Source: Octopus bimaculoides
Lineage: Eukaryota
DNA: 64,000 bases
Assembly (NCBI RefSeq): GCF_001194135.2
Contig: NC_068990.1
Location: 78,683,258 to 78,747,257, forward strand
Reading direction: 5' to 3'
Notes under the pieces: generated by a model
What the model was told of the DNA's origin: nothing
Databases searched by the model: none
What the model saw: only the letters and a program-made list of their open reading frames with translations
Part shown: positions 3,991 to 64,000 of the stretch, piece after piece
How the letters are laid out: each line of letters opens with the position of its first letter
Numbering within the stretch: the stretch's first letter is position 1
Position numbers and translations under genes: made by a program

Positions 3991-4223
3991 TATTTCTTTA
4001 TTGTCCACAAGGGGCTAAACATAGAGGGGACAAACAAGGACAGGCAAAGGGATTAAGTCGATTACATCGACCCCAATGTGTAACTGGTACTTAATTTATC
4101 GACCCCGAAAGGATGAAAGGGAAAGTCGACCTCGACGGAATTTGAACTCAGAACGTAACGGCAGACGAAACCCCGCTAAGCATTTTGCCCGGCGTGCTAA
4201 CGTTTCTGCCAGCTCACCGCCTT
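3991..4223 (-). mobile_element. tRNA-derived SINE family A, young copy with TSD
   Basis: Head GGCGGTGAGCTGGCAGAAACGTTAGC, B-box GAGTTCAAATTCC, core CTTTCATCCTTTCGGGGTCGATAAATTAAGTACCAG. 13-bp TSD TCCTTCATATTCT at 3978-3990 and 4224-4236. Confidence 0.88.
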
Positions 4224-6432
4224 TCCTTCATATTCTATCATATTCCTTCATATTCTGTCAACCTAACCAACAGACTGAGGTCTTTATTATCAACAGTTGC
4301 TGTGACTGATGGTTATCTTAATCTTAACATAATTAATGTTGTGAGCATCAAAACTCTAATTAGAAATAACAATGAAATAAGGACAAAACAATAATTTACT
4401 CAGTGACTAGTTTTGTAATTATGGCAAGAGAAACAACTTGGGGGCATGTTTCAGTTTTATGAGTCCTCTTTAGTAAAGCATACACTCCATTGTCTTCGTA
4501 GAAATAAGGATTTATCTTTTAAAGAATATGTTAGATATTTATGTCTAAACACAAACAATATAATATAATGAGTTAATAGAGTCTAACATCGTTATTTTGG
4601 TAAATATAAAGAAATTTGTGTTAATTCAGCAGTAACCATATGTAGAGTTATTTCTCATATTAGTTGAAATGATTCAAGAAATATGAAAGATTGAGTTAAT
4701 ATTGTCTTTTTCTCACAAAATTATCATTTCTAATTGTATTTTTGATGCTGACTCAATTGATTATTTTAACACTAACTTCACTCTTGTTTTTCATTCAGAC
4801 AGTATCTCTGGTTAATTATAATTAATCTTAGAGATGTCATTTATGAAATATGATTGTAAACATCGTAAACATTTCTGTTATCAACCTCTGCAGACACATT
4901 GCAACTAATAAGTCAACAACAACTCTCTCTCTCTCGCTTGCTCTCTCCCTCTCTCCCCCCCCCCTCTCTCTCTCTCTCTCTCATTAATGTTCACTGTTTG
5001 TGTTGATTCACTCCACATCTACTAAGTATATGTCTCTAGTTAAGATCTACAGATTGGTTTATTTGGTCAATATTTACAAACTCCGGTCCATTGATAGACA
5101 GTGATCAATGGAGTCGATAACTTTAGATTGTGATCATTCCACCAACCAATAACTGAAGACTTTGTCTCTTCAGCCAATATTTATTGATATTATATTTTGT
5201 ATTTATGGAGGTACTATTTACAAACAGCCTGAATCTGACAGAAACAAAGAAATAAAATGCTTTTTAGGGCATGAAAACCCCAGAGTGAAATATTATTTTA
5301 TGTCAATAGAAATACGTTTATTAAGAAGTAACCCAATATTTGAAAATCATCCAACCAAGTTTTTAGCTCAAGGTTACAACTGGGAAGTTTCTAAGCAGGT
5401 TTTACTTTCTCAGAGCTGGGATTACATGCAAACACAAACAATGTAAAAAATGTTCTCACACACACACACATACACACACACAGCACCCTAATTATGTTTT
5501 ATTTAATCACTTGGTCAAAGGTTGAAGGGCAATGCCCTTGACCATTTTTCATGGCCTCGAACACAGCTGGTAGGGAGGAAAGAGGTCATTCTCAAACCAG
5601 AAATCTGGCTCAAATACTGTCCACATAACAGACTCCAGTAAATGCAGCCATGTTCCAGGTGAGGGTTTTAAACAGGTGGGGGTGGGGGATGAATTAAGTT
5701 TAACACACACAAACACACACACATTACTGTCAGTGCAACCATGTACACACACTAACTCTAACATGTCGTCTGCACTAACCGGTATTTATTCACACACACA
5801 CACACACACACATGCCCACACACTATGCATATATAATACCTCACACAAGATAATAGTATTTCTCTGTTAATGTAAAGTGAAATGTTGTCTTGTGTAAAGG
5901 GACAGCTGGTATTTGATATAAAAAAAAGAGATGTAAAGACAAAAACTGTCCTCTTTTTACACAAACACCAAACACACAAAGAGATTGTCCCCCCCCCATG
6001 CACAAATACGCAAACAAACATATATGCATTCATATACATACTCACAAACACACACACAAATATTTTATCCCTACACTCATTTAAGACACACATACACTCA
6101 TTTAAGACTGAAGAACCCTTAGTGTCTTTGCAAAGATTTCATCCCTTTTTAGCTCAAATGTTACAGTTGGGTGGCATATTGAGAACCCTGTGCCACTTCT
6201 AATGTCACAGCTCTGTGACACATTTGGAAGCTTGTGTCACAGCTGTGTGACATGTTAAAAACTTTGTGTCACCCTTAATGTCATGTGACTGTGACTTAAG
6301 AGGAGACACATTATAAAAAGATGTGAGAAGACACTGAAAGAGATTTAATCTTTAATTTGTACAATTCCACTTGATATAAAAAGGATATTTTAGGTTTGTG
6401 TGGAAAATGAACCCATCGTTTATCTATCTACA

Positions 6433-6518
6433 TCAGTGGTTCTCAACTGGGGTCATCATGACCCTTGGGGTTCATATAAGATTTTGTTGTTAAGGGTTTG
6501 GTGAAATAATTTGGTTAT
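6433..6518 (+). mobile_element. hAT-like MITE 5' end truncated by a LINE
   Basis: Begins CAGTGGTTCTCAACTGGGG (hAT/Charlie-type TIR) and abuts the LINE remnant; no matching 3' TIR seen. Confidence 0.5.
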
Positions 6519-6519
6519 T

Positions 6520-7335
6520 TTCCCTCCCAAAATGCATGGCAGTACACCTGTCCACAGCCAGCTTAAGTTGCTGGTCCATGATCCATTGTTGCATTGTGTC
6601 CAGGTCCAATTTCAGGAAAGATCTATAGTGTTCAGGATCTGACCTTTTTATCTCAAGGTACAGCTTGATGTCATCTGCATATTTCAGCACTGTGGCATTC
6701 TTTAAGTTGGTATCTATGTTATTAATGTACGCAACAAACAAAAGGGGACCAAGAACAGATCCCTGTGGTACACCAGATGATATCTCATAGGGTGAAGAAT
6801 GCTGTCCTAGAACTGTGACCACCTCTTTTCAGCTGAGAATGGACTCCAACCAGTTTAAAAGATCATCTTTCACACCCATTGCAGAAAGTTTTGCCATAAG
6901 TCTTTTGTGTGGCACAGAATTAAAAGCTTTAGAAAAGTCAAGGTAAACAACATCCACCCATGAACTGCCATCAGTGACTCGGGTGATGTCTTTAAGAAAC
7001 TCAATAAGTTGATCACAGCAGCTAAAGTTAGGGATAAATCCAAACTGTGAGGGGCGGATAAGGCTGTGAGAATTCCAGAAATTCCAGAACAGTGTTTCTC
7101 TGGCACAGGATTCCATTAGTTTGGCAATGCAGCTAATAAGATTGACTGGACGATAGTTGACAAGTGTTGACCGATTTTGAACAGAGGAATGACACTCACA
7201 GTTTTCCACTGCTCTGGAATATCATCACCGTTATTAAGGCAGAACTGAAAGAAGAGTGAAAGCTGGTGCAGAAGAAAGTACCCACCACGTTTGAGAAGCA
7301 GGTACGTAACATTATCAAGACCATGGAGGCATAGT
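6520..7335 (-). mobile_element. CR1/L2-type LINE reverse transcriptase remnant
   Basis: NYRPVNLISCIAKLME, PSQFGF, VDVVYLDFSKAFNSVPH, SGVPQGSVLGPLLF and KYADD, split by frameshifts. Confidence 0.92.
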
Positions 7336-11104: not shown

Positions 11105-11318
11105 TGGTTTCCAATTTTGGGACAAGGCCAGCAATTTAGGGGGAGGGGCAAGTCAGTTACATCGCCCCTAGTGTTCAACTGGTACTTATTTTATTGCCTC
11201 CGAAAGGATGACAGGCAATGTCGATTCTGGTGGCATTTGAACTCAGAACATAAAGACGGACGAAATGTTGCGAAGCATTTTGTCTGGCGCGCTAACGATT
11301 CTGCCAGCTTGTCACCTT
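11105..11318 (-). mobile_element. SINE family A copy. Others at about 18921-19130(-), 28975-29135(+), 29830-30044(+), 34915-35035(-), 42226-42438(+), 54280-54420(+), 57855-57958(+), 62755-62968(-)
   Basis: Shared GAGTTCAAAT..GCC.AGGT.GACTTTGCCTTTCATCC...AAGTACCAGT...CTGGGGT.GATGTAAT motifs; boundaries approximate. Confidence 0.82.
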
Positions 11319-18637: not shown

Positions 18638-19803
18638 TTTGTATGAACTTATACAAATGTAAAAGATAGGAATAATTGCAATTATACAGATGTGTTTCTA
18701 CGGAAGGGCTTGTAGATGTATGCCTACATGTAGTGATGTTGCATAATGATGGGTGTGCAAGAAAATCTACATGAACCTACATGAACAAAGTCTACAAGCC
18801 AATGTGATTTACATTTAAATGAAGAAACACAAATATGGCCATATAAATATATATAGATGTATACATACAACGAATGTAGGTGGGTGAGCGTAGATAAGGA
18901 TAAGATAATATGTAGATTTATTGGTTTGAAGTTTTGGCACAAGATCAGCAATTTCAGGGAAGGGTGAAAGTCAATTACACCAGTCAATGACTGGTACTTA
19001 TTTCAATGACCCTGAAAGGGTGAGAGGCAAAGTCAACCTCAGTGGAATTTGAATGCAGAACTTAAGGACGGACAAAGTGCCACTTAGCATTTTGCCTGGT
19101 ATGCTGCCAATTCTGCCAGCTTACTGCCTTATAAATATATGGCCAGAATAATATGTAAATATATAGCAAAGTAGTTCCTGTTTTTTTTTATATCTAAGGT
19201 AAAGCGAGTGAATATAGTTGCAGACTATCCATAAGTTTATGTAAAATGAGAAAGAATAAAATATGAATTAAATATAAGGAAGAGGCATGAAACGATGAAT
19301 GTCGATATGGTCAGGATTGGTTAGAAGAGAACTTATCAATAATACAATGTGCTGTGTGTCTGTGATATTTGTTAGTTGAGGAGGTTGACTGGTGGACTGG
19401 TGGACTGACCCCTTGGTAGTGGGTAGCAGACTAAAAGACAGGAAGACACATGGGAGATGAATGGCAAGAAAGAAACACTGAGAAAGATGCATAAGAATAG
19501 AAAACGTTTGGGTGAGTGGAAAGGCATGGGTTGAGCTGTTTGAAGAGTAAATATTATTATTTAGTTGTTTGTTGGAGGTTCTTTTTAGCATGACACATTT
19601 GTTTTGGTTTTATGTGAAATTTCTGTGGCCCTAATCAAAACCATTAATTGGAGAAGTTGATCATAAGAACCTTTAAATCAATGAATTTCTTTTTATAATT
19701 TTAGCCAATCAGATACATCCATTCTCTACACACCGTGACAATCTTTTTGAAAGATCTGTGCTTTTAGTTTCTGCCCAGAATCAATTCTCTAAGCAAAAGT
19801 AAT

Positions 19804-21299: not shown

Positions 21300-22130
21300 T
21301 GTTACCAGGGTAAGGGTGATGCCTTAGAAACAATTACAGAGGTATCAAACTGCTAGACCAAGTCATGAAAGTTACTGAGATTGATTAGGAATAGAATTAA
21401 ACTAGATGCGATGCAGTTTGGTTTTGTACCTCGGAAGAGTATCACAGATGCCATCTTCCTAGTGAGGCAACTGCAGGAAAAGTACTTGGCCATTGTACTT
21501 AGCCTTCGTTGACCTGGAGAAAGCTTTCAACAGAGTTCCCCGCTCTGTTATATGGCAGTCCCTAAGGAAGTTAGGAGTAGAGGAGTGGCTTCTTAGAGCT
21601 GTACAAACCATGTACAGTGGTGCTGTCAGTAGGGTGAGAGTCGGCCATGAATACAGTGATGAATTTAGTGTACAAGTAGGGGTTCACCAGGGCTCAGTTC
21701 TCAGCCCACTCTTATTCATTATAGTCCTCCAGGCCATAACAGAGGAATTCAAAACTGGGTGGGAACTGCTGTATGCTGATGACTTTGCTCTTATTGCAGA
21801 ATCTTTAGCAGAATTGGAGAAGAAATTTCAGATATGGAAACAAAACCTTAAAGTTAATCTAGCAAAGACCAAAGTGGTTGTTAGTAAGAAAGAAGATAAA
21901 ACTCTTTTTCTGTCAGGTAAACAGCCCTGCTCAATATGTAGGAAAGGAGTTGGAAGAAATTCAATTCACTGCACCCAGTTTACACTGGACATATAAGAGG
22001 TACAGTGGAATCACAGGTAGATTAACAGATAAAGTTGTCTTTGTATGTGGCAGATGTGCAAGAACAAAAAGCACCAGGAGCACATGGGACTTAGATTCTC
22101 TCAAATGTCCAGGAGTAAACTGAATGGAAC
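21300..22130 (+). mobile_element. RTE-type LINE RT remnant with Cys-rich (PHD-like) tail
   Basis: NYRGIKLLDQVMK, QFGF, LAFVDLEKAFNRVPR, VGVHQGSVLSPLLF, LLYADD, PCSICRKGVGRNSIHC, FVCGRC. Confidence 0.93.
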
Positions 22131-24549: not shown

Positions 24550-24614
<65 letters not shown>

Positions 24615-25081
24615 NNNNNNNNNNNNNNNNNNNNNNNNNNNNNNNNNNNNNNNNNNNNNNNNNNNNNNNNNNNNNNNNNNNNNNNNNNNNNNNNNNNNNN
24701 NNNNNNNNNNNNNNNNNNNNNNNNNNNNNNNNNNNNNNNNNNNNNNNNNNNNNNNNNNNNNNNNNNNNNNNNNNNNNNNNNNNNNNNNNNNNNNNNNNNN
24801 NNNNNNNNNNNNNNNNNNNNNNNNNNNNNNNNNNNNNNNNNNNNNNNNNNNNNNNNNNNNNNNNNNNNNNNNNNNNNNNNNNNNNNNNNNNNNNNNNNNN
24901 NNNNNNNNNNNNNNNNNNNNNNNNNNNNNNNNNNNNNNNNNNNNNNNNNNNNNNNNNNNNNNNNNNNNNNNNNNNNNNNNNNNNNNNNNNNNNNNNNNNN
25001 NNNNNNNNNNNNNNNNNNNNNNNNNNNNNNNNNNNNNNNNNNNNNNNNNNNNNNNNNNNNNNNNNNNNNNNNNNNNNNNNN

Positions 25082-25117
<36 letters not shown>

Positions 25118-26717: not shown

Positions 26718-27708
26718 AATTATACGACATTCCTAGGACCCTGCNNNNNNNNNNNNNNNNNNNNNNNNNNNNNNNNNNNNNNNNNNNNNNNNNNNNNNNN
26801 NNNNNNNNNNNNNNNNNNNNNNNNNNNNNNNNNNNNNNNNNNNNNNNNNNNNNNNNNNNNNNNNNNNNNNNNNNNNNNNNNNNNNNNNNNNNNNNNNNNN
26901 NNNNNNNNNNNNNNNNNNNNNNNNNNNNNNNNNNNNNNNNNNNNNNNNNNNNNNNNNNNNNNNNNNNNNNNNNNNNNNNNNNNNNNNNNNNNNNNNNNNN
27001 NNNNNNNNNNNNNNNNNNNNNNNNNNNNNNNNNNNNNNNNNNNNNNNNNNNNNNNNNNNNNNNNNNNNNNNNNNNNNNNNNNNNNNNNNNNNNNNNNNNN
27101 NNNNNNNNNNNNNNNNNNNNNNNNNNNNNNNNNNNNNNNNNNNNNNNNNNNNNNNNNNNNNNNNNNNNNNNNNNNNNNNNNNNNNNNNNNNNNNNNNNNN
27201 NNNNNNNNNNNNNNNNNNNNNNNNNNNNNNNNNNNNNNNNNNNNNNNNNNNNNNNNNNNNNNNNNNNNNNNNNNNNNNNNNNNNNNNNNNNNNNNNNNNN
27301 NNNNNNNNNNNNNNNNNNNNNNNNNNNNNNNNNNNNNNNNNNNNNNNNNNNNNNNNNNNNNNNNNNNNNNNNNNNNNNNNNNNNNNNNNNNNNNNNNNNN
27401 NNNNNNNNNNNNNNNNNNNNNNNNNNNNNNNNNNAAATCTGTATGTGTGTGTGTGTGTGTGGATGTTCCCCACTATGTGGGCAGTATTTTGTGCAGTGCA
27501 TGGTAAGGTTTTGTGTGTGTGTGTGTGTGTGTGATGCAGGAGTGATGAGGAAGAAAGAGTGAGACATAAATGCAATTAGAAAGAAATTGGGGAAGAAGAG
27601 GTGGGGGTGGAATAGTCGAGAAAAAATGCTAAGAAGGAGAAAGAGAGAGAGTAAAAGAGAATCAAGTTAGGATGGAAGAAAGCTGAATAACAGAGATAGT
27701 AGTAGTAT

Positions 27709-28972: not shown

Positions 28973-29182
28973 GTCAATGATCTGGCAGAAGTGTTAGCAT
29001 GTTGGACAAAATGTTAAGTGGCATTTCTTTCATTCTGAGTTCAAATTCTGCCAAGATTGACTTTGCCTTTCATCCTTTTGGGGTTGATGAGATAAGTACC
29101 TGTTGATCACTGGAGTCAATGTAATCAACTTGTTGAAACCATTATTATTGTTGTTATTTTTGTTGTTGTTGTTATTGTATAG

Positions 29183-29745: not shown

Positions 29746-30085
29746 GAACCAACTGACTGTTATTACAAATTTTGCTGTGTTGTGGTTGCTGTTGTTGTTG
29801 TCATTATCATTATTATTATAATTATTATGAAGGTGGTGTTCTGGCAGACTCGTTAGCATGTTGGACAAAATGCTCAGCAGTATTTTATCTGTCCTTACAT
29901 TTTGAGTTCAAATTCTGCCGAGGTTGACTTTGCCTTTCATTCTTCCGGGGTCAATAAAATAAGTACCAGTCATGTACTGGGGTCGATGCAATCGACTTAC
30001 CCAGCTCCCCTGAATTGCTGGCCTTGTGCCAAAATTTGAAAGCCTTCTTCTTCTTCTTCTTCTTCTTCTTCTTCTTCTTCTTCTA

Positions 30086-31127: not shown

Positions 31128-31343
31128 NNNNNNNNNNNNNNNNNNNNNNNNNNNNNNNNNNNNNNNNNNNNNNNNNNNNNNNNNNNNNNNNNNNNNNNNN
31201 NNNNNNNNNNNNNNNNNNNNNNNNNNNNNNNNNNNNNNNNNNNNNNNNNNNNNNNNNNNNNNNNNNNNNNNNNNNNNNNNNNNNNNNNNNNNNNNNNNNN
31301 NNNGTGGTTTTTTGAAGTTTACATAAATGGTTTTTCTTGGCAG

Positions 31344-32572: not shown

Positions 32573-33814
32573 TTAGGTCGTCAAATATTAAATTTGTAGT
32601 AAGGTATATGGTAAACTTTGACAGCTGCTCATTTTGTGCCATTATTTTTTGTTAGAAAGCTGACACATCTATTTCTTTATTCTAACTTTCTAACTCATTT
32701 TGCACTTTATAAAGTATTTATGTATCATTTTTTGCTATTTTTGTTTAGAGATGGATAAGTCGGAAATTCGTACAGTTTTGAAATATGAGTTCTCTCTTGG
32801 AAATACAGCATCACAGGCAGCTCAGAATATTAATCGAATATTTCATTCTAATGTTATTACACAGGAGACAGTATCAAATTGGTTTGCAAAATTTCGTTCT
32901 AGTAACTTTGACCTCACAAATGAGCAGCATGGTCGACCAGAAACAAAGGTGGATAATGACGAACTGAAAGGCACTGTCGAGTCAGATCCATCTCAAAGTG
33001 TCCTTGAATTATCGTTGTTGTTTGGTGTTAGCAAGCAAATAATATTGATTCACTGAGTTCAAATCGGTAAAGTGAAAATCAGAAACAGCAATGTTTGGAA
33101 GTCTGCATTATGCTACTTTCTCGTCACAAAAGTTAATCATTTTTTAATCGAATTGTAACATGTGATGAGAAATGGATCAATTTCAACAACCGTAAACGTT
33201 TAGCACAATGGTTGGACAAAGACGAGCAACCAAAACACAGTCCAAAAGGCAAAATTCATCAAAAGAAGCTGATGGTGTGTGTTTGGTGGTCTGGCGCAAG
33301 TGTGATCCATTATGACTTCATTAAACCTGGCTCATCAATCACGGCCGCAGTATACTACAACCAACTGGACCAAATGATGCAGAAACTTAGAAAGAAACAA
33401 CCTAGATTAGTCAACAGATCCACTCCTATTTTATTGCACGACAACACCAAACCACACATTGCAAAAATGACATTGGAGAAACTGCAGGAGTTGGAGTTGG
33501 AAGTTCTCCATCATTCACCATACTCACCTGATCTTGCCCCCACGGACTACCACTTCTTCCAGAATTTTGATAACTGTTTGATAGGAAAAAAAAAAATTAA
33601 ATTCCGATGATGCTGTAAAACAGGCCTTCCAGGATTTTAATGACCCCTAGATTGCCAGGCTTTTACAGTTCTGGGCTGGACAAGCTACTGCTAAAATGGT
33701 AAAAGTGTATTGACAATATTGGTGCATACTTTGATGAATAAAACTATTCCTTGTATTTATAAAACATTAGCAAACTTTTTTTCTTTTCTACAAATTTCAT
33801 ACTTGACGACCTAA
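32573..33814 (+). mobile_element. Full-length decayed mariner (Tc1/mariner, DD34D) transposon in SUGCT intron 6
   Basis: 27-bp TIRs TTAGGTCGTCAAATATTAAATTTGTAG / CTACAAATTTCATACTTGACGACCTAA (2 mismatches), TA at 33815-16. Broken transposase 32751-33741 with HTH, TCDEKW, HDN and YSPDLAPTDY; contains stops and frameshifts. Confidence 0.95.
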
Positions 33815-42110: not shown

Positions 42111-43683
42111 GTAAGTAAACTTCTCCAAAATTGTCTAAATGTACTTAATGAGGGTTAGTGTGGAAAAAAACAAACAATTAACTAAAATAGAGAATCATTT
42201 ATGTTTGTAATATTATGTGCTACATAAGGGCAGTGAGCTGACAGAATCATCGGCCCAGGATGGGGGGGAATGTTTTGTGGCATTTTGTCTGTCTTTATGC
42301 TCTGAGTTCAAATTTGACCAAGGTTGACTTTCATCCTTTCAGGGTCGATAAAATAAGTACCATTTGAACACTGGGGTTGATGTAATTGACTTACCCACTG
42401 CCCCAAAATTGTTGGCCTTGTGCTAAAAATTTGAAACCAAAATCATGGGTTGCATGTTTGTGGGGAGAAACTGAAATTGTGGGCAAGGCATGAATCTTTA
42501 TTTATCAAGAAGTATGAATTACATATTTGCCTGTAGGTCTATGCATTTGTGTGTATTCCTCACTATAGACACACACACACACACACACACACACACAAGC
42601 ATATATGTTCAGTGTTTTAATATCTAGTTTTTCCTGCTGGCATGGGTTGGAGGTCTGCTACACAACATATCTTTGTCGCCAACCCCCTTTCATCCTTTCT
42701 TAGAGGACACAATTGTCTGACGATGAGTATTGGTTGATCGACCAAATCAATTTCTCTTTCAATTAATATGCAATGTGGTTGAGTGCTCCACAGACATGTG
42801 TGCCTTTAAAGTAATTCCCAAAGAGAACCAGCATGATACAGTGACAAGGCCGGGCTTTTTGAATATCACAGGGGGCTTCCTCATAGTTTCCATTATCCCA
42901 ATTTCTTTTACAAGTTTTGGCTTGGCCTGAAACTCTGGTAATGGACCCTCATCTCAGATGCCTTGTCAGGGATTGAATCTAGAACCCTATGATTGGGAAG
43001 TAAATTCCTTAATCATTTGGCCAAGATAAAGCAACAACACCAATAACACTGTGTAACACGATTTTTGTCCTTGGGTAGAAACTGTTATTTCCTGTTTACT
43101 TATCCTTTGAAAATATGAAAAATGGCTGATATTTCCTTCAAATTTTGCCTTTGTTATGATATTTATTGAAATCCCAAAGAATCCCTCTCAGTACTTGACT
43201 ATGTTGCTCTCTTACTACTCCTGCTCCTGATCAGAGATGCACATATTGTCAACCACTAAGGGACATATACTCAAGTGGATAAGGTCAAACAACTGACAAA
43301 CAAATCTGTGGTATTGAGCAGAATATTTGCTATAACGATATTTCTGCTTCAGCAACTCAATGCTGAATCTGTGTGAAATGTAATGGAAAATAGGTCAGTT
43401 TCAAAACATTGATGTCCAGGTGACAAAAGCAAAGTTTGAAGGGAATAGCAGTCATTTCCTTTGGTTTCTAGATAGAAGCAAAGAGGAAATAATACTTATT
43501 GACTGAAGACAAAATAAATGAATAAAAATGTTGTTACTCTGTGTAATTAACAGAGAAAAATTCAGTTTTCTGTTTCTATAGTTGTTATTTCATTATACAT
43601 CTGACTCCAGATATGACCCTCACCACTTAGTCTCTCTTTAGTTTCTCTCTATTAATATCTGAATCTTTCTCTCTCCATTTCAG

Positions 43684-55165: not shown

Positions 55166-55196
<31 letters not shown>

Positions 55197-55201
55197 TATA
55201 T

Positions 55202-55353
55202 GTCCCTGAATGCAGGCTGGGCTGGTTGGAGGAGTTTGTCTCCCCTTTGTATGGATAAGGGCACAGAAAGTGTGTCAAGGCCTAATAGGAAGCGGTCTGG
55301 CTTCCTAGGGCTAAACAGCAGTAGTGTATTCCCTTATTGGGACTGTCACGTTA
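55202..55353 (+). mobile_element. Same short repeat, copy 2, lacking the ribozyme 5' part
   Basis: Shares TCTCCCCTTTG, ATAAGG.CACAGAAA.TGTGTCA, CTAGGGCTAAA.AGCAGTAG and GGACTG.CAC.TTA with 62590-62739. Flanked by (TA)n on both sides; lies in the last P4H-like intron. Confidence 0.65.
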
Positions 55354-55370
55354 AGTTGGCAGTATACAAC

Positions 55371-55413
<43 letters not shown>

Positions 55414-56887: not shown

Positions 56888-58478
56888 TTCCCCCTCTCTC
56901 TCTCCCCTCTCTCCCCACTAAATTTCTAGAAATCAAGGGTTCACGCTGGTGAAATCAACAATTTTCAACGAATATTAAAATCACGAATGACACTTTCATA
57001 AACTATAACGGCGGTGATTTTAAGCCTAGTTGAAAATTGTTGATTTTTTTCAACGTGAAACCTAAGGTTCTAGAAAGTTAACATAGATTCTATTAAAAAG
57101 AATTGCTTCTCCAACTACACGGTGTTGAATACTCAATCTATCACACACACACACACATATCGTGAGAGAGAAAGAGAGGGTGGGGGTGGGGAGAAAAATT
57201 TATAGTTAAACTGCCTTCGTCTGACTTAAATACTCTCTAATCAACGTTTTTCAAACATAAACTATCTTCACGTCAAAAGAATCCCTCATGTCTAATTGTG
57301 TCACAATCTCTCCTTAATGTCAATACATTTTAAAACATGTCTACAATGAATCAGGCTTTCTATCTTCCATTTTGATTTGTCTCTATATTGTTTGTAAATA
57401 ACCTTGAACGATATCTTAGCAATCAGGTATATATTGGCTTTAGGTATTTAACAAGGATTAACTAGTTTCTTGTTGTTTCATCTTCAGTTTTAAAATTTTT
57501 GCTCAATTCATCAGATACTCAGAACATGTTTATAAGTAGAAGAGTTTGTCACGAAATCATTGAATTTAAGGGAAATTCTTATCAGCGCTTTGATAGTCTT
57601 CCTTTCTTCCTATTTCCGCGTCTCTTCATATTTGTTAAACCTTCAAACAGCATCTTTCAACAAACGCAGGCGAAGTTTTTGTTTCTCTTTGATAAGAATT
57701 TCATTTCAGATTTTCGCAGTTTGTCATTTGAAAACCAAGCCAAGTCCTTGCGGTTCACAAAAACTTTCAGTATCTTTAATACTGTGCACTCTGTGATGTA
57801 ATAGTCTTATCTACAGGTTTACCTTAGAAATCTTATTATTAAGATGTTGAATTAGGTTCAAATGCCGCCGGAGTCGACTTTGCCTTTTATCCTTTCGGGG
57901 TCGATAAATTAAGTACCAGTTACGCACTGGGGTAGATGTAATCGACTCATCCTCTCCCNNNNNNNNNNNNNNNNNNNNNNNNNNNNNNNNNNNNNNNNNN
58001 NNNNNNNNNNNNNNNNNNNNNNNNNNNNNNNNNNNNNNNNNNNNNNNNNNNNNNNNNNNNNNNNNNNNNNNNNNNNNNNNNNNNNNNNNNNNNNNNNNNN
58101 NNNNNNNNNNNNNNNNNNNNNNNNNNNNNNNNNNNNNNNNNNNNNNNNNNNNNNNNNNNNNNNNNNNNNNNNNNNNNNNNNNNNNNNNNNNNNNNNNNNN
58201 NNNNNNNNNNNNNNNNNNNNNNNNNNNNNNNNNNNNNNNNNNNNNNNNNNNNNNNNNNNNNNNNNNNNNNNNNNNNNNNNNNNNNNNNNNNNNNNNNNNN
58301 NNNNNNNNNNNNNNNNNNNNNNNNNNNNNNNNNNNNNNNNNNNNNNNNNNNNNNNNNNNNNNNNNNNNAAACGTAGTATTCGAGGGTTAAGATTCGATCT
58401 AAGAAAAATACAAACGTTTCACTTTATCGATATTTAGTCATCAATTTAATAATTCCTTGAATTATCGAATGTTTTTGA

Positions 58479-59417: not shown

Positions 59418-60539
59418 TAGTAGTTAAACAGACAGAACCATAAACACTGGACACAGATGGAAACAAGTTGAAAATAAATTATTAAGGTGGGAGAGAAAAA
59501 TAAACGGTTTTGAAACAATTAAGTTACATAATGTTTTGAGCGGCCATCATTTTGATAAAGGGGAATTACTACCGGAAGTCAGACATAGAGACATAGATAT
59601 TCGTACATATACATACACAGACACACACACGCACACATACATACGCTCACTCACACAAACACTCACACATGCACACACATTCACACTCACACATACACAC
59701 ACATACAGCATCCATTGTATACACTCATATAAAGCACACACACACACACACACACTTATCAAGCTGCTAATCCGCCTAAAGAAGTGATTATTTATATTCT
59801 GTCAACAAGAAATGGTTTTGATTAGCGTCGAGTGGTTTAGAGTAAGTGGAAAGACGAGTGGTCAAGATACGTCCAAAATCTAATTGGTTCCTCGAGGGAT
59901 GGAACCTAGGAATATGTTGATACAATTATTAACTTCACTTAAGGATTCCGCTTGATTTGCTGGTTGGTTGGTTATTTTTAAAATCAGAAAACCAGATTTT
60001 GTTTGAATTGCCAGACCAGTCCCCTGGTTGCGTAGCGAACCAGTGAACCATTTGGTTGCCGAGTGAAGAAGTAATGTGATGCGATGCTAAATGAGGGGAA
60101 TGGAAAACTGTTNNNNNNNNNNNNNNNNNNNNAAGTGGACACAGGATGAGTGGGTGGAAGTGCCATCGACGTAATGGGCGTGGATGGGGCGGCCTGAAAT
60201 ACAGTTCGAGGAAATGCACGGCATATGAAATGATCTATACGTTGAGACTGGGGTCTGAAAGCCGCCCCCCCACACACATTAAAAGTATATATATAAATAT
60301 ATATCTTCATATATTTAAGCATATATAACTTAAAATACATACAGGCATGTATGCAACTATTGTAAGTTTCTTCATACATACATACACACACATACATACA
60401 TACATACATACATACACACATACACACACACATGCACACACATACATACATATATATACATACACACATACATATATACATACACACAGACATACATACA
60501 TGCAATATCTCACAATGCTTTTGTAGTACCAGTGCTATA

Positions 60540-61599: not shown

Positions 61600-61640
<41 letters not shown>

Positions 61641-62442
61641 TANNNNNNNNNNNNNNNNNNNNNNNNNNNNNNNNNNNNNNNNNNNNNNNNNNNNNNNNNN
61701 NNNNNNNNNNNNNNNNNNNNNNNNNNNNNNNNNNNNNNNNNNNNNNNNNNNNNNNNNNNNNNNNNNNNNNNNNNNNTATATATATATATATATAAGTGCA
61801 TATACATGAATGTGTGTGTGTGTGTGTGCGTGCGTGTATGTGTGCGTTCGTGCGTGTGCTTGACAATGTCGTAAAGTGATGTTAAGCTCCCAGCAAGATG
61901 AGTCTGCGAATCAGACTCATGTCGTTTCACTTCACTTCCTTTCGTCCCCCTTCACCTGTTCCAATTTGCTGGTCAAAGTGGATACCTGCTCATGATTAGT
62001 CCTCGATACACTTTATGAAGGTGACGTGTTCGGAGGGTTAGTGGTGGTGGTGGAATATTTCATCATTATGGAAATTTTTTAAACCAGTTGGAAGTGAGTT
62101 GACCAGATATCTAAATCAATATGAGTCAAACTCGCTCTTTCTCTTTCACTGTCTCTCAAATCGATATAAATCGATAAAATATGTACGTCAAATGTCATTA
62201 TTTAATGGAGCTGCACCACCACCTCATGTCTCTGGTTTATCATTATTTCTCCATAAATCTGGTGAACTGTCGGCGGAGAGCTCCTAGTTGCAGTTCAAAA
62301 CACCGTGTTGCTTGCTTCATAATGTTTACATATGTATACGCACGCACGCGCGCACACACATGTATTTATCTAGATAGAATGTATAAAACACAAAAGCAGA
62401 TACACACACACACACACACACACACAGAGACACACACACAGA

Positions 62443-62493
<51 letters not shown>

Positions 62494-62499
62494 TCACTT

Positions 62500-62739
62500 G
62501 AAATATATATGTTTTCAAAGGCGAATAAGCATCGACAGATAGCAAGCCATGCTACTCCAGACTGATGAAGAGCAATGACTCTGAAACTAGTCTCTGGATG
62601 CTGGCTTTGCTGGGTGGAGGTGCTTATCTCCCCTTTGAAAACATAAGGACACAGAAAATGTGTCATGGGAAACTGGAAACGGTGTTTTCTAGGGCTAAAT
62701 AGCAGTAGCATTCTTCCCTTTCATAGGACTGCCACATTA
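62500..62739 (+). mobile_element. Hammerhead-bearing short non-coding repeat (retrozyme/Penelope-terminus-like), copy 1
   Basis: Follows a (CA)n array, contains the 62542-62610 ribozyme, and 62590-62739 aligns with 55202-55353. Confidence 0.6.
62542..62610 (+). ncRNA. Type I hammerhead ribozyme with canonical core
   Basis: Stem I TCCAGA(62556-61)/TCTGGA(62593-98); core CTGATGA(62562-68); stem II AGAG/CTCT with loop CAATGA; GAAA(62583-86); palindromic stem III ACTAGT; GUC cleavage triplet (cut after 62592); distal stem I GCAAGCCA/TGGCTTTGC. Confidence 0.85.
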
Positions 62740-64000
62740 TATTAACATATATTGGTTTTATATTTTGGCACGAGGCCAGCAATTTCGTGGGGAGAGAGTA
62801 AGTCTATTACATCGCCCCTAGTGTTCAACTGGAACTTATTTTAATGACCCCGAAAGGATGAAAGCCAAAGGCGACCTCAGAGGAATTTGAACGCAGAATG
62901 TATAGGCGAACGAAATACCGCTAAGCATTTTGTCCGGCGTACTAAGGTGCTTGCCAGTTGACAGCCTTTATTTGAACATATACTAACATGTATTTCGCAT
63001 ATATCAATATATAGTAACGTGTCATAACAACTTGAATATAGTAAATATACATAAGAGGATCTTTGGTGAGTAGATACACCAGATCGATTAGGTAAGCGGT
63101 ATTTTATTGGTCGAATGACCAGGTTCATTTGAAGATCCATTATTCCAAATATGCCTTTTTGTAACAACATGCAGTGGGATATTGCTGTGAGTCTTGTGTG
63201 ACAGAGCGATATATTGCAGCTGGCCTTCATAAAACCTGTATTTGTTAGGGTCAGGTACAATAGAAGTGGACATGGTGGGCTACATGGGAGAAACCAAGGC
63301 TGTGTGGTGAAGAAGTTTGTTACGCAATTAAATGTTTACGGTTTCAATCTCAATTCGTGGTTTCCTGAACAATTGTCTTCTCAGTTAAATTTGGTTTACA
63401 GGAACTGAGGGAAATTCTGTCGAAGGTCCGTTAATATTTTTGGATAGTAGACCTTATATCGGTTTAACCCCCACCCCAACTGGTGTCTATGTACGTTTAC
63501 TTGTGTCTGTTATAGTAACAATTGGTTCAGGCTTTTGAAGTGTAAATAATTTCCTCCATTCTTCTCACCAATGACGGTGGCTCTGAAAAGTATCATCCCT
63601 GTTACCCTTCGGCCTTCTCTCTTCACCCAAGATAAACAGACGACATTGTGGTCGTCTGCACGTAATGTTTTGTGCTGATGACCAAACTTAATTTACTTTC
63701 TTTTATTTCTCTAATCGTTTAACTCATCAATTCATTTAGTTCTTAGTTTAATCATTCGTTATTTCTCTTATCTCCTCTTTTACACCCCGCTTCTGTTGTT
63801 TGTCTTCATATTTACTCACACACACACGCACATGCATTCATCTAGATATTGTATACATATACATACATGATACACACACACACACACGCACACACACACG
63901 TACGTACCTACCTACCTACCTACTTACCTACCTACCTACCTACCTACCTACATAAACATACATACATGCGTGTGTATTGTATTGCATTGCTACATATCCA

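What the first reader, a model, noticed from the sequence alone, without database searches (positions are those of the whole stretch)
62542..62610. Complete canonical hammerhead ribozyme with a palindromic stem III
Seen: the full conserved core is present (CUGAUGA, GAAA, GUC triplet). Stem I is a perfect 6 bp, extended by an internal loop and a distal stem GCAAGCCA/TGGCTTTGC. Stem II is 4 bp with a 6-nt loop and an A-U closing pair rather than the usual G-C. Stem III is just the palindrome ACUAGU. Established: Penelope-like retroelements and retrozymes carry minimal type I hammerheads whose palindromic stem III lets two copies pair and cleave as dimers. Inference: this is a self-cleaving RNA of a cephalopod microsatellite-associated mobile element, possibly uncatalogued. 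Loop II and the stem I internal loop could form the usual accelerating tertiary contact.
Basis: partly seen in the sequence, partly recalled or inferred. Interest (0 to 1): 0.85.

Follow-up and report, generated by a model that had tools for sequence, protein, structure and literature searches.

The report
Octopus retroelement copy with hammerhead ribozyme
A complete self-cleaving "hammerhead" RNA motif of the usual animal type sits at the tip of a long hairpin inside a ~270-bp mobile-element copy in an octopus-like genome; it is a real motif, but an ordinary, already known kind of element.

Summary
Window 62556-62598 (+) holds a full type I hammerhead: helix I 6 bp, CUGAUGA, helix II 4 bp with a 6-nt loop, GAAA, the palindrome ACUAGU, GUC, and a predicted cut after 62592. 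The layout matches, element by element, the Schistosoma-derived N79 ribozyme, including the UAC bulge 5' of helix I. A generic descriptor alone is weak evidence (9 of 2000 shuffles). The full canonical layout is far beyond chance.

The motif caps a ~145-nt hairpin in a ~273-bp element (62495-62767) that follows an (AC)45 microsatellite. A second copy (55202-55375, about 75% identical) lies inside (TA)n and starts within 0-3 nt of the predicted cut. The host is Octopus-like.

Best reading: a fossil copy of a short retroelement that depends on Penelope-like elements, of the retrozyme or Sm-alpha type. Its ribozyme needs a partner copy to form helix III.

Caveats:
- Rfam models do not score it, but they also miss a similar hammerhead elsewhere.
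- The 10.1-11.1 pair is A-U, not the conserved G-C.
- There is no tandem partner.
- No further copies could be retrieved, so helix covariation and activity are untested.

Verdict: new member of a known kind, modest interest.

The parts
62402..62492 (.). (AC)45 microsatellite directly 5' of element copy 1 (flank or target)
   Evidence: Tandem Repeats Finder; sequence
62495..62767 (+). Element copy 1, ~273 bp, GC ~43%. It has a 5' hammerhead rod and a 3' domain. Both ends are uncertain by about 10 nt because the flanks are AT-rich.
   Evidence: Extent of homology to copy 2; fold -91.5 kcal/mol, z -6.35; GC
62500..62645 (+). Long imperfect hairpin (rod) that extends helix I, with the hammerhead at its tip
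   Evidence: Self reverse-complement match 62508-62645; minimum free energy structure; weak generic hairpin hit to MIR8742, E 0.44
62542..62610 (+). Hammerhead with distal helix I (the finding's coordinates)
62553..62555 (+). UAC bulge 5' of helix I, opposite the single U at 62599. It occupies the same position as the UAC in the Schistosoma-derived N79 ribozyme.
   Evidence: N79 sequence printed in PMC12550524; alignment
62556..62598 (+). Hammerhead core: helix I 62556-61/62593-98; CUGAUGA 62562-68; helix II 62569-72/62579-82 with loop 62573-78; GAAA 62583-86; palindrome ACUAGU 62586-91; C17 62592; predicted cut 62592|62593
   Evidence: Descriptor scan, the only hit on either strand
62648..62664 (+). 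Hairpin A (GACACA-GAAAA-UGUGUC) in the 3' domain. Copy 2 (55260-55276) keeps it, with A-U changed to G-U.
62675..62689 (+). Hairpin B (GGAAAC-GGU-GUUUUC). Copy 2 (55288-55305, GGAAGC-GGUCUG-GCUUCC) keeps it through one compensatory change (A-U to G-C) and one G-U to G-C change.
62690..62709 (+). Best-conserved box, TAGGGCTAAATAGCAGTAGC; 18 of 20 bases identical in copy 2 (55306-55325)
62757..62767 (+). U/A-rich 3' end (TTTTATATTTT) shared with copy 2, where it runs into (TA)n
   Evidence: Alignment
55202..55375 (+). Element copy 2. It lacks the 5' 98 nt, is about 75% identical to 62590-62767, and begins within 0-3 nt of the position matching the predicted cut. It is flanked by (AT)18 at 55166-55201 and (TA)17 at 55376-55410.
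62768..62990 (+). Unrelated SINE-like repeat inserted at the 3' tail of copy 1 (not part of the element)
   Evidence: At least 7 further copies in the window; no tRNA-like gene found

Best explanation
62542-62610 is a genuine descendant of the canonical animal type I hammerhead ribozyme, the Schistosoma Sm-alpha / newt satellite / non-LTR retrozyme design. It is carried in the 5' part of a ~273-bp non-coding retroelement copy in an Octopus-like genome.

Mechanism (inferred):
1. The element is transcribed.
2. Helix I (6 bp, extended into a long rod) and helix II (4 bp) fold within one RNA. The UAC bulge and the 6-nt loop II dock on each other.
3. Helix III is only A-U plus a CUAG loop, so a single RNA is a poor ribozyme. 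Two hammerhead copies, from a tandem or longer-than-unit transcript or from two transcripts, pair through ACUAGU/ACUAGU. This forms a 6-bp helix III, and each RNA then cuts after C17 (62592).
4. The 3' product (62593-62767) carries conserved hairpins and a U/A-rich end. A Penelope-like reverse transcriptase/endonuclease probably recognises and copies it into (TA)n or (CA)n microsatellites.

Copy 2 looks like such a cut product. The copy at 62495-62767 is most likely a solitary fossil insertion with no partner in cis, not a working host gene.

Shown here: motif anatomy, near-optimal fold, repeated element, microsatellite context, conserved 3' hairpins. Inferred: cleavage, dimer requirement, and which enzyme mobilises the element.
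For: - The core and all three helices are intact, and this is the only such site in the window.
- Helix I of 6 bp, helix II of 4 bp, and helix III of 1-2 bp capped by a palindromic loop is how Cervera & de la Pena define canonical metazoan hammerheads (PMC4209133).
- The layout matches the active N79/Sm1 ribozyme element by element: UAC, 6 bp, CUGAUGA, 4 bp, CAAxxA loop, GAAAC...UC, 6 bp, U (PMC12550524).
- The hammerhead fold is within 1.8 kcal/mol of the minimum free energy structure.
- The whole element folds at z -6.35 with the ribozyme at the tip of the rod.
- A second copy exists at about 75% identity. It has microsatellite flanks and begins within 0-3 nt of the predicted cut.
- The 3' hairpins are kept through compensatory or compatible changes.
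- Size (273 bp) and GC (~43%) fit non-LTR retrozymes, described as ~170-400 bp and under 45% GC (PMC7229834).
- Penelope-like elements show insertion bias for (TA)n and (CA)n (PMC8557442).
- The host is Octopus-like, and hammerhead_1 loci are reported in a squid genome.
- A metagenome contig carries a hammerhead with identical helix I and III strands inside a 1021-nt direct repeat.
Against: - No Rfam hammerhead model reports the site, even at E up to 10 on an 81-nt slice. The same is true for the L001 hammerhead, so the models or their filters seem blind to this design.
- The 10.1-11.1 pair is A-U, whereas G-C is described as highly conserved (PMC4209133). Activity may be reduced.
- There is only one hammerhead in the window and no tandem unit, so there is no partner in cis.
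- No other hammerhead-bearing copy could be retrieved. Helices I and II therefore have no covariation support, and the copy number is unknown.
- The match between the start of copy 2 and the cut site is a single case next to a microsatellite.
- In an anole Penelope-like element, hammerhead mutants did not affect insertion in vitro (PMC11167929).
Confidence: 0.8

Rival explanations
1. This is the same ribozyme, but the 273-bp stretch is not a separate short element. It is the 3' terminal piece (pseudo-LTR region) of a 5'-truncated autonomous Penelope-like element. Copy 2 is then just a shorter truncation.
For: Most genomic hammerheads of Penelope-like elements occur as single motifs thought to be truncated elements (PMC4209133). 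The two copies share their 3' end and differ at the 5' end, as expected for target-primed reverse transcription. Both sit in microsatellites.
Against: Hammerheads of metazoan Penelope-like elements are described as minimal. They have a long helix II (6-8 bp), an extra base after A9, no helix III and no loop contacts. This one has the canonical retrozyme/Sm-alpha design. The long rod that starts right at the 5' end of copy 1 looks like a complete structural unit. No RT/GIY-YIG reading frame lies next to either copy; the RT fragments in the window are more than 40 kb away.
Confidence: 0.2
2. The hammerhead look is a coincidence. The locus is simply a hairpin-forming repeat (MITE-like or microRNA-like) whose internal loop happens to spell the core.
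For: A generic descriptor hits shuffled sequence often (0.28 per window; the strict version in 9 of 2000 shuffles). In a long hairpin, helix I comes for free. Rfam hammerhead models are silent, and the region gives a weak generic hairpin hit (MIR8742, E 0.44).
Against: About 12 specified core bases sit at the right spacing, together with the exact canonical 6 bp / 4 bp / 6-nt loop, the UAC bulge and a palindromic helix III, as in N79. I estimate about 1e-9 per window (own arithmetic). The hammerhead fold is nearly optimal. A-U at 10.1-11.1 still keeps the pair.
Confidence: 0.04
3. A host-domesticated ribozyme or small RNA gene: an intronic regulatory hammerhead, or a C/D-box snoRNA-like RNA using UGAUGA...CUGA.
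For: Weak C/D-box snoRNA-like matches over 62556-62598 (E 6-8, 12-14 bits). Conserved intronic hammerheads exist in amniotes (PMC6155905).
Against: The snoRNA scores are far below the gathering thresholds (35-42 bits), and the stretch is too short for a snoRNA. The locus is a repeat with a diverged truncated paralogue, wedged between a microsatellite and a SINE-like insertion. That is typical of junk insertions rather than a conserved gene.
Confidence: 0.03

Closest known systems
Schistosoma mansoni Sm-alpha hammerhead (Sm1; engineered form N79) in a SINE-like non-autonomous retrotransposon
   Same: Type I topology. It has the same order of parts: distal stem, UAC bulge, 6-bp helix I, CUGAUGA, 4-bp helix II, 6-nt loop beginning CAA and ending A, GAAAC, UC cut, 6-bp strand, and a single U opposite the bulge. 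The carrier is a short non-coding retroelement with the ribozyme in its 5' part.
   Different: Here 10.1-11.1 is A-U, not G-C. Loop II is CAAUGA, not CAAAUA. Helix I continues into a ~145-nt rod. No pol III boxes or tRNA-like part were seen. The host is a cephalopod.
Metazoan non-LTR retrozymes (Cervera & de la Pena 2020, PMC7229834)
   Same: Canonical type I hammerhead with a mini palindromic helix III that works as a dimer. The unit size is about 170-400 bp and GC is below 45%. The RNA is highly self-paired.
   Different: Retrozymes are defined by tandem repeats that give circular RNAs. Here there is one unit and one hammerhead, with no tandem partner. Circular RNA was not testable.
Minimal hammerheads in pseudo-LTRs of Penelope-like elements (Cervera & de la Pena 2014, PMC4209133)
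   Same: Palindromic 15.2-16.2 region, predicted dimeric action, retroelement context, and insertion in microsatellites.
   Different: Those motifs have a 6-8-bp helix II, an extra base between A9 and 10.1, G10.1-C11.1, and no helix III or loop contacts. This one has the canonical design. No RT/endonuclease frame is adjacent.
Hammerhead in metagenome contig Ga0314680_10104106 (L001)
   Same: Identical CCAGA/UCUGG helix I strands, CUGAUGA, GAAACUAGUC and a UAC-containing 5' bulge. It too is missed by Rfam.
   Different: Helix II is GACC/GGUC with an extra G after A9. It is carried in a 1021-nt direct repeat unit. There is no similarity outside the ribozyme.

Membership tests
Hammerhead ribozyme, type I | Conserved core C3-U4-G5-A6-N7-G8-A9 ... 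G12-A13-A14 ... A15.1/U16.1-H17 | tested here: met
   CUGAUGA 62562-68, GAA 62583-85, A15.1 62586, U16.1 62591, C17 62592
Hammerhead ribozyme, type I | Three helices around the core, with helix I as the open one | tested here: met
   Helix I 6 bp, open and extended. Helix II 4 bp, capped. Helix III is A-U plus a CUAG loop, or a 6-bp intermolecular palindrome.
Hammerhead ribozyme, type I | G10.1-C11.1 pair, described as highly conserved | tested here: not met
   A62569-U62582. The position is still paired, but as A-U (conservation statement in PMC4209133).
Hammerhead ribozyme, type I | Score at or above gathering for an Rfam hammerhead covariance model | tested here: not met
   No hammerhead family listed at gathering, nor at E up to 10 on 351-nt and 81-nt slices. 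The similar L001 hammerhead is also unreported, so the test has low power for this design.
Hammerhead ribozyme, type I | Compensatory changes in helices I and II among related copies | tested here: inconclusive
   The only other copy lacks the 5' half. No further copies were retrievable.
Hammerhead ribozyme, type I | Site-specific Mg2+-dependent self-cleavage giving 2',3'-cyclic phosphate and 5'-OH ends | not testable with these tools
   Needs in vitro transcription and mapping of the cut.
Canonical metazoan type I hammerhead (Sm-alpha / newt / retrozyme design) | Helix I 6 bp, helix II 4 bp, helix III 1-2 bp capped by a 2-4-nt palindromic loop | tested here: met
   6 bp, 4 bp, and A-U closing the palindromic CUAG loop (definition in PMC4209133)
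Canonical metazoan type I hammerhead (Sm-alpha / newt / retrozyme design) | Loop 1 and loop 2 nucleotides able to make the tertiary contact | tested here: inconclusive
   The UAC bulge and the 6-nt loop CAAUGA sit at the same positions as UAC and CAAAUA in N79. Three of six loop bases differ, and the contact itself cannot be computed here.
Non-LTR retrozyme | Head-to-tail tandem repeats, each unit with a hammerhead | tested here: not met
   No tandem unit at the locus. One hammerhead in 64 kb. The second copy is 7 kb away and lacks the ribozyme.
Non-LTR retrozyme | Unit of about 170-400 bp, GC below 45%, highly self-paired RNA | tested here: met
   About 273 bp, GC about 43%, fold z -6.35; criteria from PMC7229834
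Non-LTR retrozyme | Expressed as linear and circular monomer RNAs | not testable with these tools
   No transcriptome search by nucleotide sequence was available.
Penelope-like element (autonomous) | RT plus GIY-YIG endonuclease reading frame between pseudo-LTRs | tested here: not met
   No such frame next to either copy. The RT fragments at 6490-7209 and 21493-21996 are distant RVT_1 pieces, and no GIY-YIG hit appeared among the 10 of the 36 long ORFs that were scanned.
Penelope-like element (autonomous) | Insertion bias for (TA)n or (CA)n microsatellites | tested here: met
   Copy 2 lies between (AT)18 and (TA)17. Copy 1 follows (AC)45 and a short (TA)4. The bias is described in PMC8557442.

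The most novel reading that the evidence does not exclude
An uncatalogued octopus family of short hammerhead-bearing retroelements in which self-cleavage defines the 5' end of the RNA that is reverse-transcribed. Copies such as 55202-55375 would be cDNAs of the 3' cleavage product. The family would have a natural A10.1-U11.1 core variant and an unusually long helix I rod. This would give direct genomic footprints of ribozyme activity in vivo in a cephalopod.
Probability: 0.3. Interest if true: 0.45.

Novelty: new member of a known kind. Interest (0 to 1): 0.3.

Why it matters
If confirmed, this adds octopods to the animals known to carry canonical, dimer-dependent hammerheads in short retroelements. 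It would also supply a natural A10.1-U11.1 variant for structure-function work.

A pile-up of genomic copies starting at the cut site would be rare in vivo evidence that these ribozymes process retroelement RNA. That point is still debated for Penelope-like elements (PMC11167929).

There is also a practical point. Rfam models reported neither this hammerhead nor the similar one in L001. Annotation based on Rfam may therefore undercount this class.

None of this changes the general picture. Such hammerheads are already described as widespread in animal genomes.

Tried and rejected
1. Rfam 15 on the whole window at gathering, and on 351-nt and 81-nt slices at E up to 10, gave no hammerhead. The only hits were sub-threshold C/D snoRNA-like and generic hairpin matches, which I rejected as noise. 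L001 likewise gave nothing.
2. To fetch genomic copies I translated the open minus-strand frame of the element (62496-62711). The word-indexed protein search found nothing.
3. The exhaustive representative search gave one hit, P0241 (E 2e-19, 13 stretches). This is the translation of a 68-bp minisatellite in GCA_033675545.1 with no hammerhead. The score is an artefact of summing weak matches over repeats, so I rejected it.
4. I fetched Octopus DNA through RT proteins: L002 (O. bimaculoides) and L003 (O. vulgaris), 41 kb in total. They hold no copy by blastn, nhmmer or descriptor. A 22-nt match at L002:119-140 is chance.
5. L004, an ENA contig, is unrelated to the window.
6. A search with a nuclear-receptor exon, meant to reach large Octopus genes, returned no labelled Octopus protein.
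7. Pattern scans:
   - Genome contigs, run twice: nothing.
   - Viral contigs: nothing.
   - Metagenome contigs: only L001.
8. No tRNA-like or pol III head was found.
9. A first shuffle script timed out because of N runs. I reran it without the Ns.
10. Literature searches for hammerhead plus octopus, bimaculoides or cephalopod found no description of this element. A search for A10.1 variants found nothing useful.

Full report
**Observation.** The sequence at 62542-62610 (+) reads GCAAGCCA-U-GC-UAC-UCCAGA-CUGAUGA-AGAG-CAAUGA-CUCU-GAA-ACUAGU-C|UCUGGA-U-GC-UGGCUUUGC. They are a 6-bp helix I (62556-61/62593-98), the CUGAUGA box (62562-68), a 4-bp helix II with a 6-nt loop, GAAA, the palindrome ACUAGU (62586-91) and C17 at 62592. 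The predicted cut is therefore 62592|62593. A descriptor I wrote (strict core, helix I at least 4 bp, helix II at least 3 bp, both strands) finds this site and nothing else in 64 kb.

**Is it more than chance?**
- The bare sequence pattern is expected 0.21 times per window.
- In 2000 dinucleotide-preserving shuffles the relaxed descriptor gave 0.28 hits per window. Helix I at least 5 bp with helix II at least 4 bp appeared in 84 shuffles. Helix I at least 6 bp, helix II at least 4 bp and a short helix III appeared in 9 shuffles.
- So a generic hammerhead hit is not decisive by itself. A multi-gigabase genome would hold many by chance.
- What is decisive is the fit to an independently published definition. 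Canonical metazoan type I hammerheads have helix I of 6 bp and helix II of 4 bp that interact through loop nucleotides. Their helix III has 1-2 bp capped by a 2-4-nt palindromic loop (PMC4209133).
- The N79 ribozyme, engineered from Schistosoma Sm1, is printed in PMC12550524. It reads GCAGG-UAC-AUCCAG-CUGAUGA-GUCC-CAAAUA-GGAC-GAAAC-(lengthened helix III)-GUC|CUGGAU-U-CCAC. The window motif has the same parts in the same order and with the same lengths. This includes the UAC bulge directly 5' of the 6-bp helix and the single U opposite it.
- From the base composition, I estimate this full layout at about 1e-9 per window (my own arithmetic).
- The hammerhead fold costs only 1.8 kcal/mol more than the minimum free energy structure (-21.5 against -23.3 kcal/mol). 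The stretch folds better than shuffles (z -2.5).

No hammerhead family was reported at gathering on the window. None was reported at E up to 10 on 351-nt or 81-nt slices either. The only matches there are far-sub-threshold C/D-box snoRNA-like hits, which share UGAUGA/CUGA, and a generic hairpin hit. A second hammerhead of the same design, in L001 (see "Relatives elsewhere"), is also unreported at E up to 10. I therefore read the negative as low sensitivity of the models or filters for hammerheads with a mini helix III. It is not evidence against the motif. It remains a failed membership test and is listed as such.

**Surroundings.**
- The ribozyme is the tip of a ~145-nt imperfect hairpin (62500-62645; self reverse-complement match).
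- The whole stretch 62495-62767 folds at -91.5 kcal/mol, z -6.35.
- Immediately 5' lies (AC)45 (62402-62492).
- Immediately 3' (from 62768) lies an unrelated SINE-like repeat with at least seven other copies in the window.
- A second copy of the element lies at 55202-55375, about 75% identical to 62590-62767.
- Copy 2 lacks the 5' 98 nt. It sits between (AT)18 and (TA)17.
- Copy 2 starts at GTC|CCTGAATGC, aligned to GTC|TCTGGATGC. That is within 0-3 nt of the predicted cut, because the GT could belong to the microsatellite, which contains ATGT elsewhere.
- Both copies share the same U/A-rich 3' end.
- Two small hairpins in the 3' domain are maintained between the copies. Hairpin B (62675-62689 / 55288-55305) has one A-U to G-C double change and one G-U to G-C change. 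Hairpin A (62648-62664 / 55260-55276) has A-U to G-U.
- A 20-nt box is 18/20 identical between the copies.
- These are the marks of a structured retroelement RNA whose 3' domain is under selection. The sample is only two copies.

**Host.** The window has N gaps, dense microsatellites, LINE-type RT fragments and a Mos1-like mariner remnant. The best labelled relatives of its RT fragment are Octopus vulgaris and O. bimaculoides proteins (68-73% identity). Its repeats match loci from those genomes at 92-95%. The cephalopod assignment is supported.

**What it is and how it probably works.**
- The literature shows that canonical type I hammerheads with mini palindromic helix III are typical of animal non-LTR retrozymes and Sm-alpha-like elements. 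They are weak as monomers and efficient as dimers (PMC7229834; PMC4209133).
- A 2026 preprint argues that such retrozymes derive from pseudo-LTRs of Penelope-like elements.
- Penelope-like elements prefer (TA)n and (CA)n targets (PMC8557442).
- The present element fits in size (~273 bp), GC (~43%), self-pairing, microsatellite context and ribozyme design.
- I therefore propose a short non-coding retroelement that depends on Penelope-like elements. Its RNA is cut after C17 when two copies pair through ACUAGU. Its 3' product is copied into microsatellites.
- Copy 2 may be the cDNA of such a product. By chance a 5' end would fall within the 4-nt junction interval (0-3 nt 5' of the cut) in about 1.5% of cases for a 273-nt element, but this is one case.
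- The copy at 62495-62767 has no partner hammerhead in cis and is probably a fossil.

**Differences from the known families.**
- 10.1-11.1 is A-U, whereas G-C is called highly conserved. The pair is kept, which argues against simple decay of a G-C ancestor, but activity may be lower.
- There is no tandem arrangement, which is the defining retrozyme feature.
- The ribozyme is not of the minimal Penelope type (long helix II, extra base after A9, no helix III).
- No RT/endonuclease frame is adjacent.
- In an anole Penelope-like element, hammerhead mutations did not change insertion in vitro (PMC11167929). The role of cleavage in mobility therefore remains open.

**Relatives elsewhere.**
- One scan of JGI metagenome contigs used the helix I/III strands and the core with a free helix II. 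It returned a single contig, L001. L001 carries CCAGA-CUGAUGA-G-GACC-UGUAG-GGUC-GAAACUAGUC-UCUGG with a UAC-containing bulge, inside a 1021-nt direct repeat whose copies are 96-99% identical. It shares nothing else with the window.
- Scans of prokaryotic genomes and viral contigs found nothing.
- Attempts to pull more octopus copies failed: translated-ORF searches, 41 kb of Octopus loci, and a host-gene route.
- Copy number and covariation in helices I and II are therefore unknown.

**Novelty and interest.**
- Hammerheads of this design are described as massive and widespread in metazoan genomes.
- 235 Hammerhead_1 loci were annotated in the giant squid genome (PMC6962438).
- I found no paper that describes hammerheads in Octopus.
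- The finding is a new member of a known kind.
- It has two mildly unusual traits, the A10.1-U11.1 pair and the long helix I rod, plus one suggestive footprint, a copy that starts at the cut site.
- I score interest at 0.3.

Noticed in passing
L001 (Ga0314680_10104106) 1-1445; hammerhead at 629-669: A metagenome contig with a 1021-nt direct repeat unit (1-425 matches 1022-1445 at 96-99%). It carries a type I hammerhead whose helix I and III strands are identical to those in the window. It looks like a tandem retrozyme-like or pseudo-LTR unit from an unknown eukaryote. Rfam reports nothing on it at E up to 10.
   Followed up: partly
window 62768-62990; also 4048-4241, 11105-11295, 18905-19094, 29004-29131(-), 29841-30041(-), 42269-42443(-), 57856-57958(-): An abundant ~200-240-bp SINE-like repeat (73-79% identity between copies). 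One copy is inserted exactly at the U/A-rich 3' tail of the hammerhead element. ARAGORN finds no tRNA-like head.
   Followed up: partly
window 6490-7209 (-) and 21493-21996 (+): Broken LINE-type reverse transcriptase fragments (Pfam RVT_1). The closest labelled relatives are hypothetical proteins of Octopus vulgaris and O. bimaculoides.
   Followed up: partly
window 32700-33610 (+): Remnant of a Mos1-like mariner transposase split over two frames (Pfam HTH_48 and Transposase_1).
   Followed up: partly
window 62556-62598 (+): The hammerhead boxes CUGAUGA ... CUGA mimic C and D boxes. They give weak C/D snoRNA-like Rfam matches (12-14 bits, E 6-8), which could cause false positives in snoRNA scans.
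   Followed up: yes
L005 11956-15262 (GCA_033675545.1, JAWDGP010005499.1): A 68-bp minisatellite with about 49 copies is annotated as an 1132-aa protein (P0241). It matched the translated element only because weak similarities summed over the repeats, so the E-value of 2e-19 is misleading.
   Followed up: yes
window 62370-62711 (-): A 113-aa open frame runs antisense through the microsatellite and the hammerhead element. It has no homologue in either protein library and is almost certainly not a gene.
   Followed up: yes
window 24600-25100, 26750-27450, 31130-31300, 60130-60150, 61640-61780 (approximate): Several runs of N (1917 in total), mostly next to microsatellites, show that this is a gapped draft assembly. 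Repeat copy counts in the window are therefore lower bounds.
   Followed up: no
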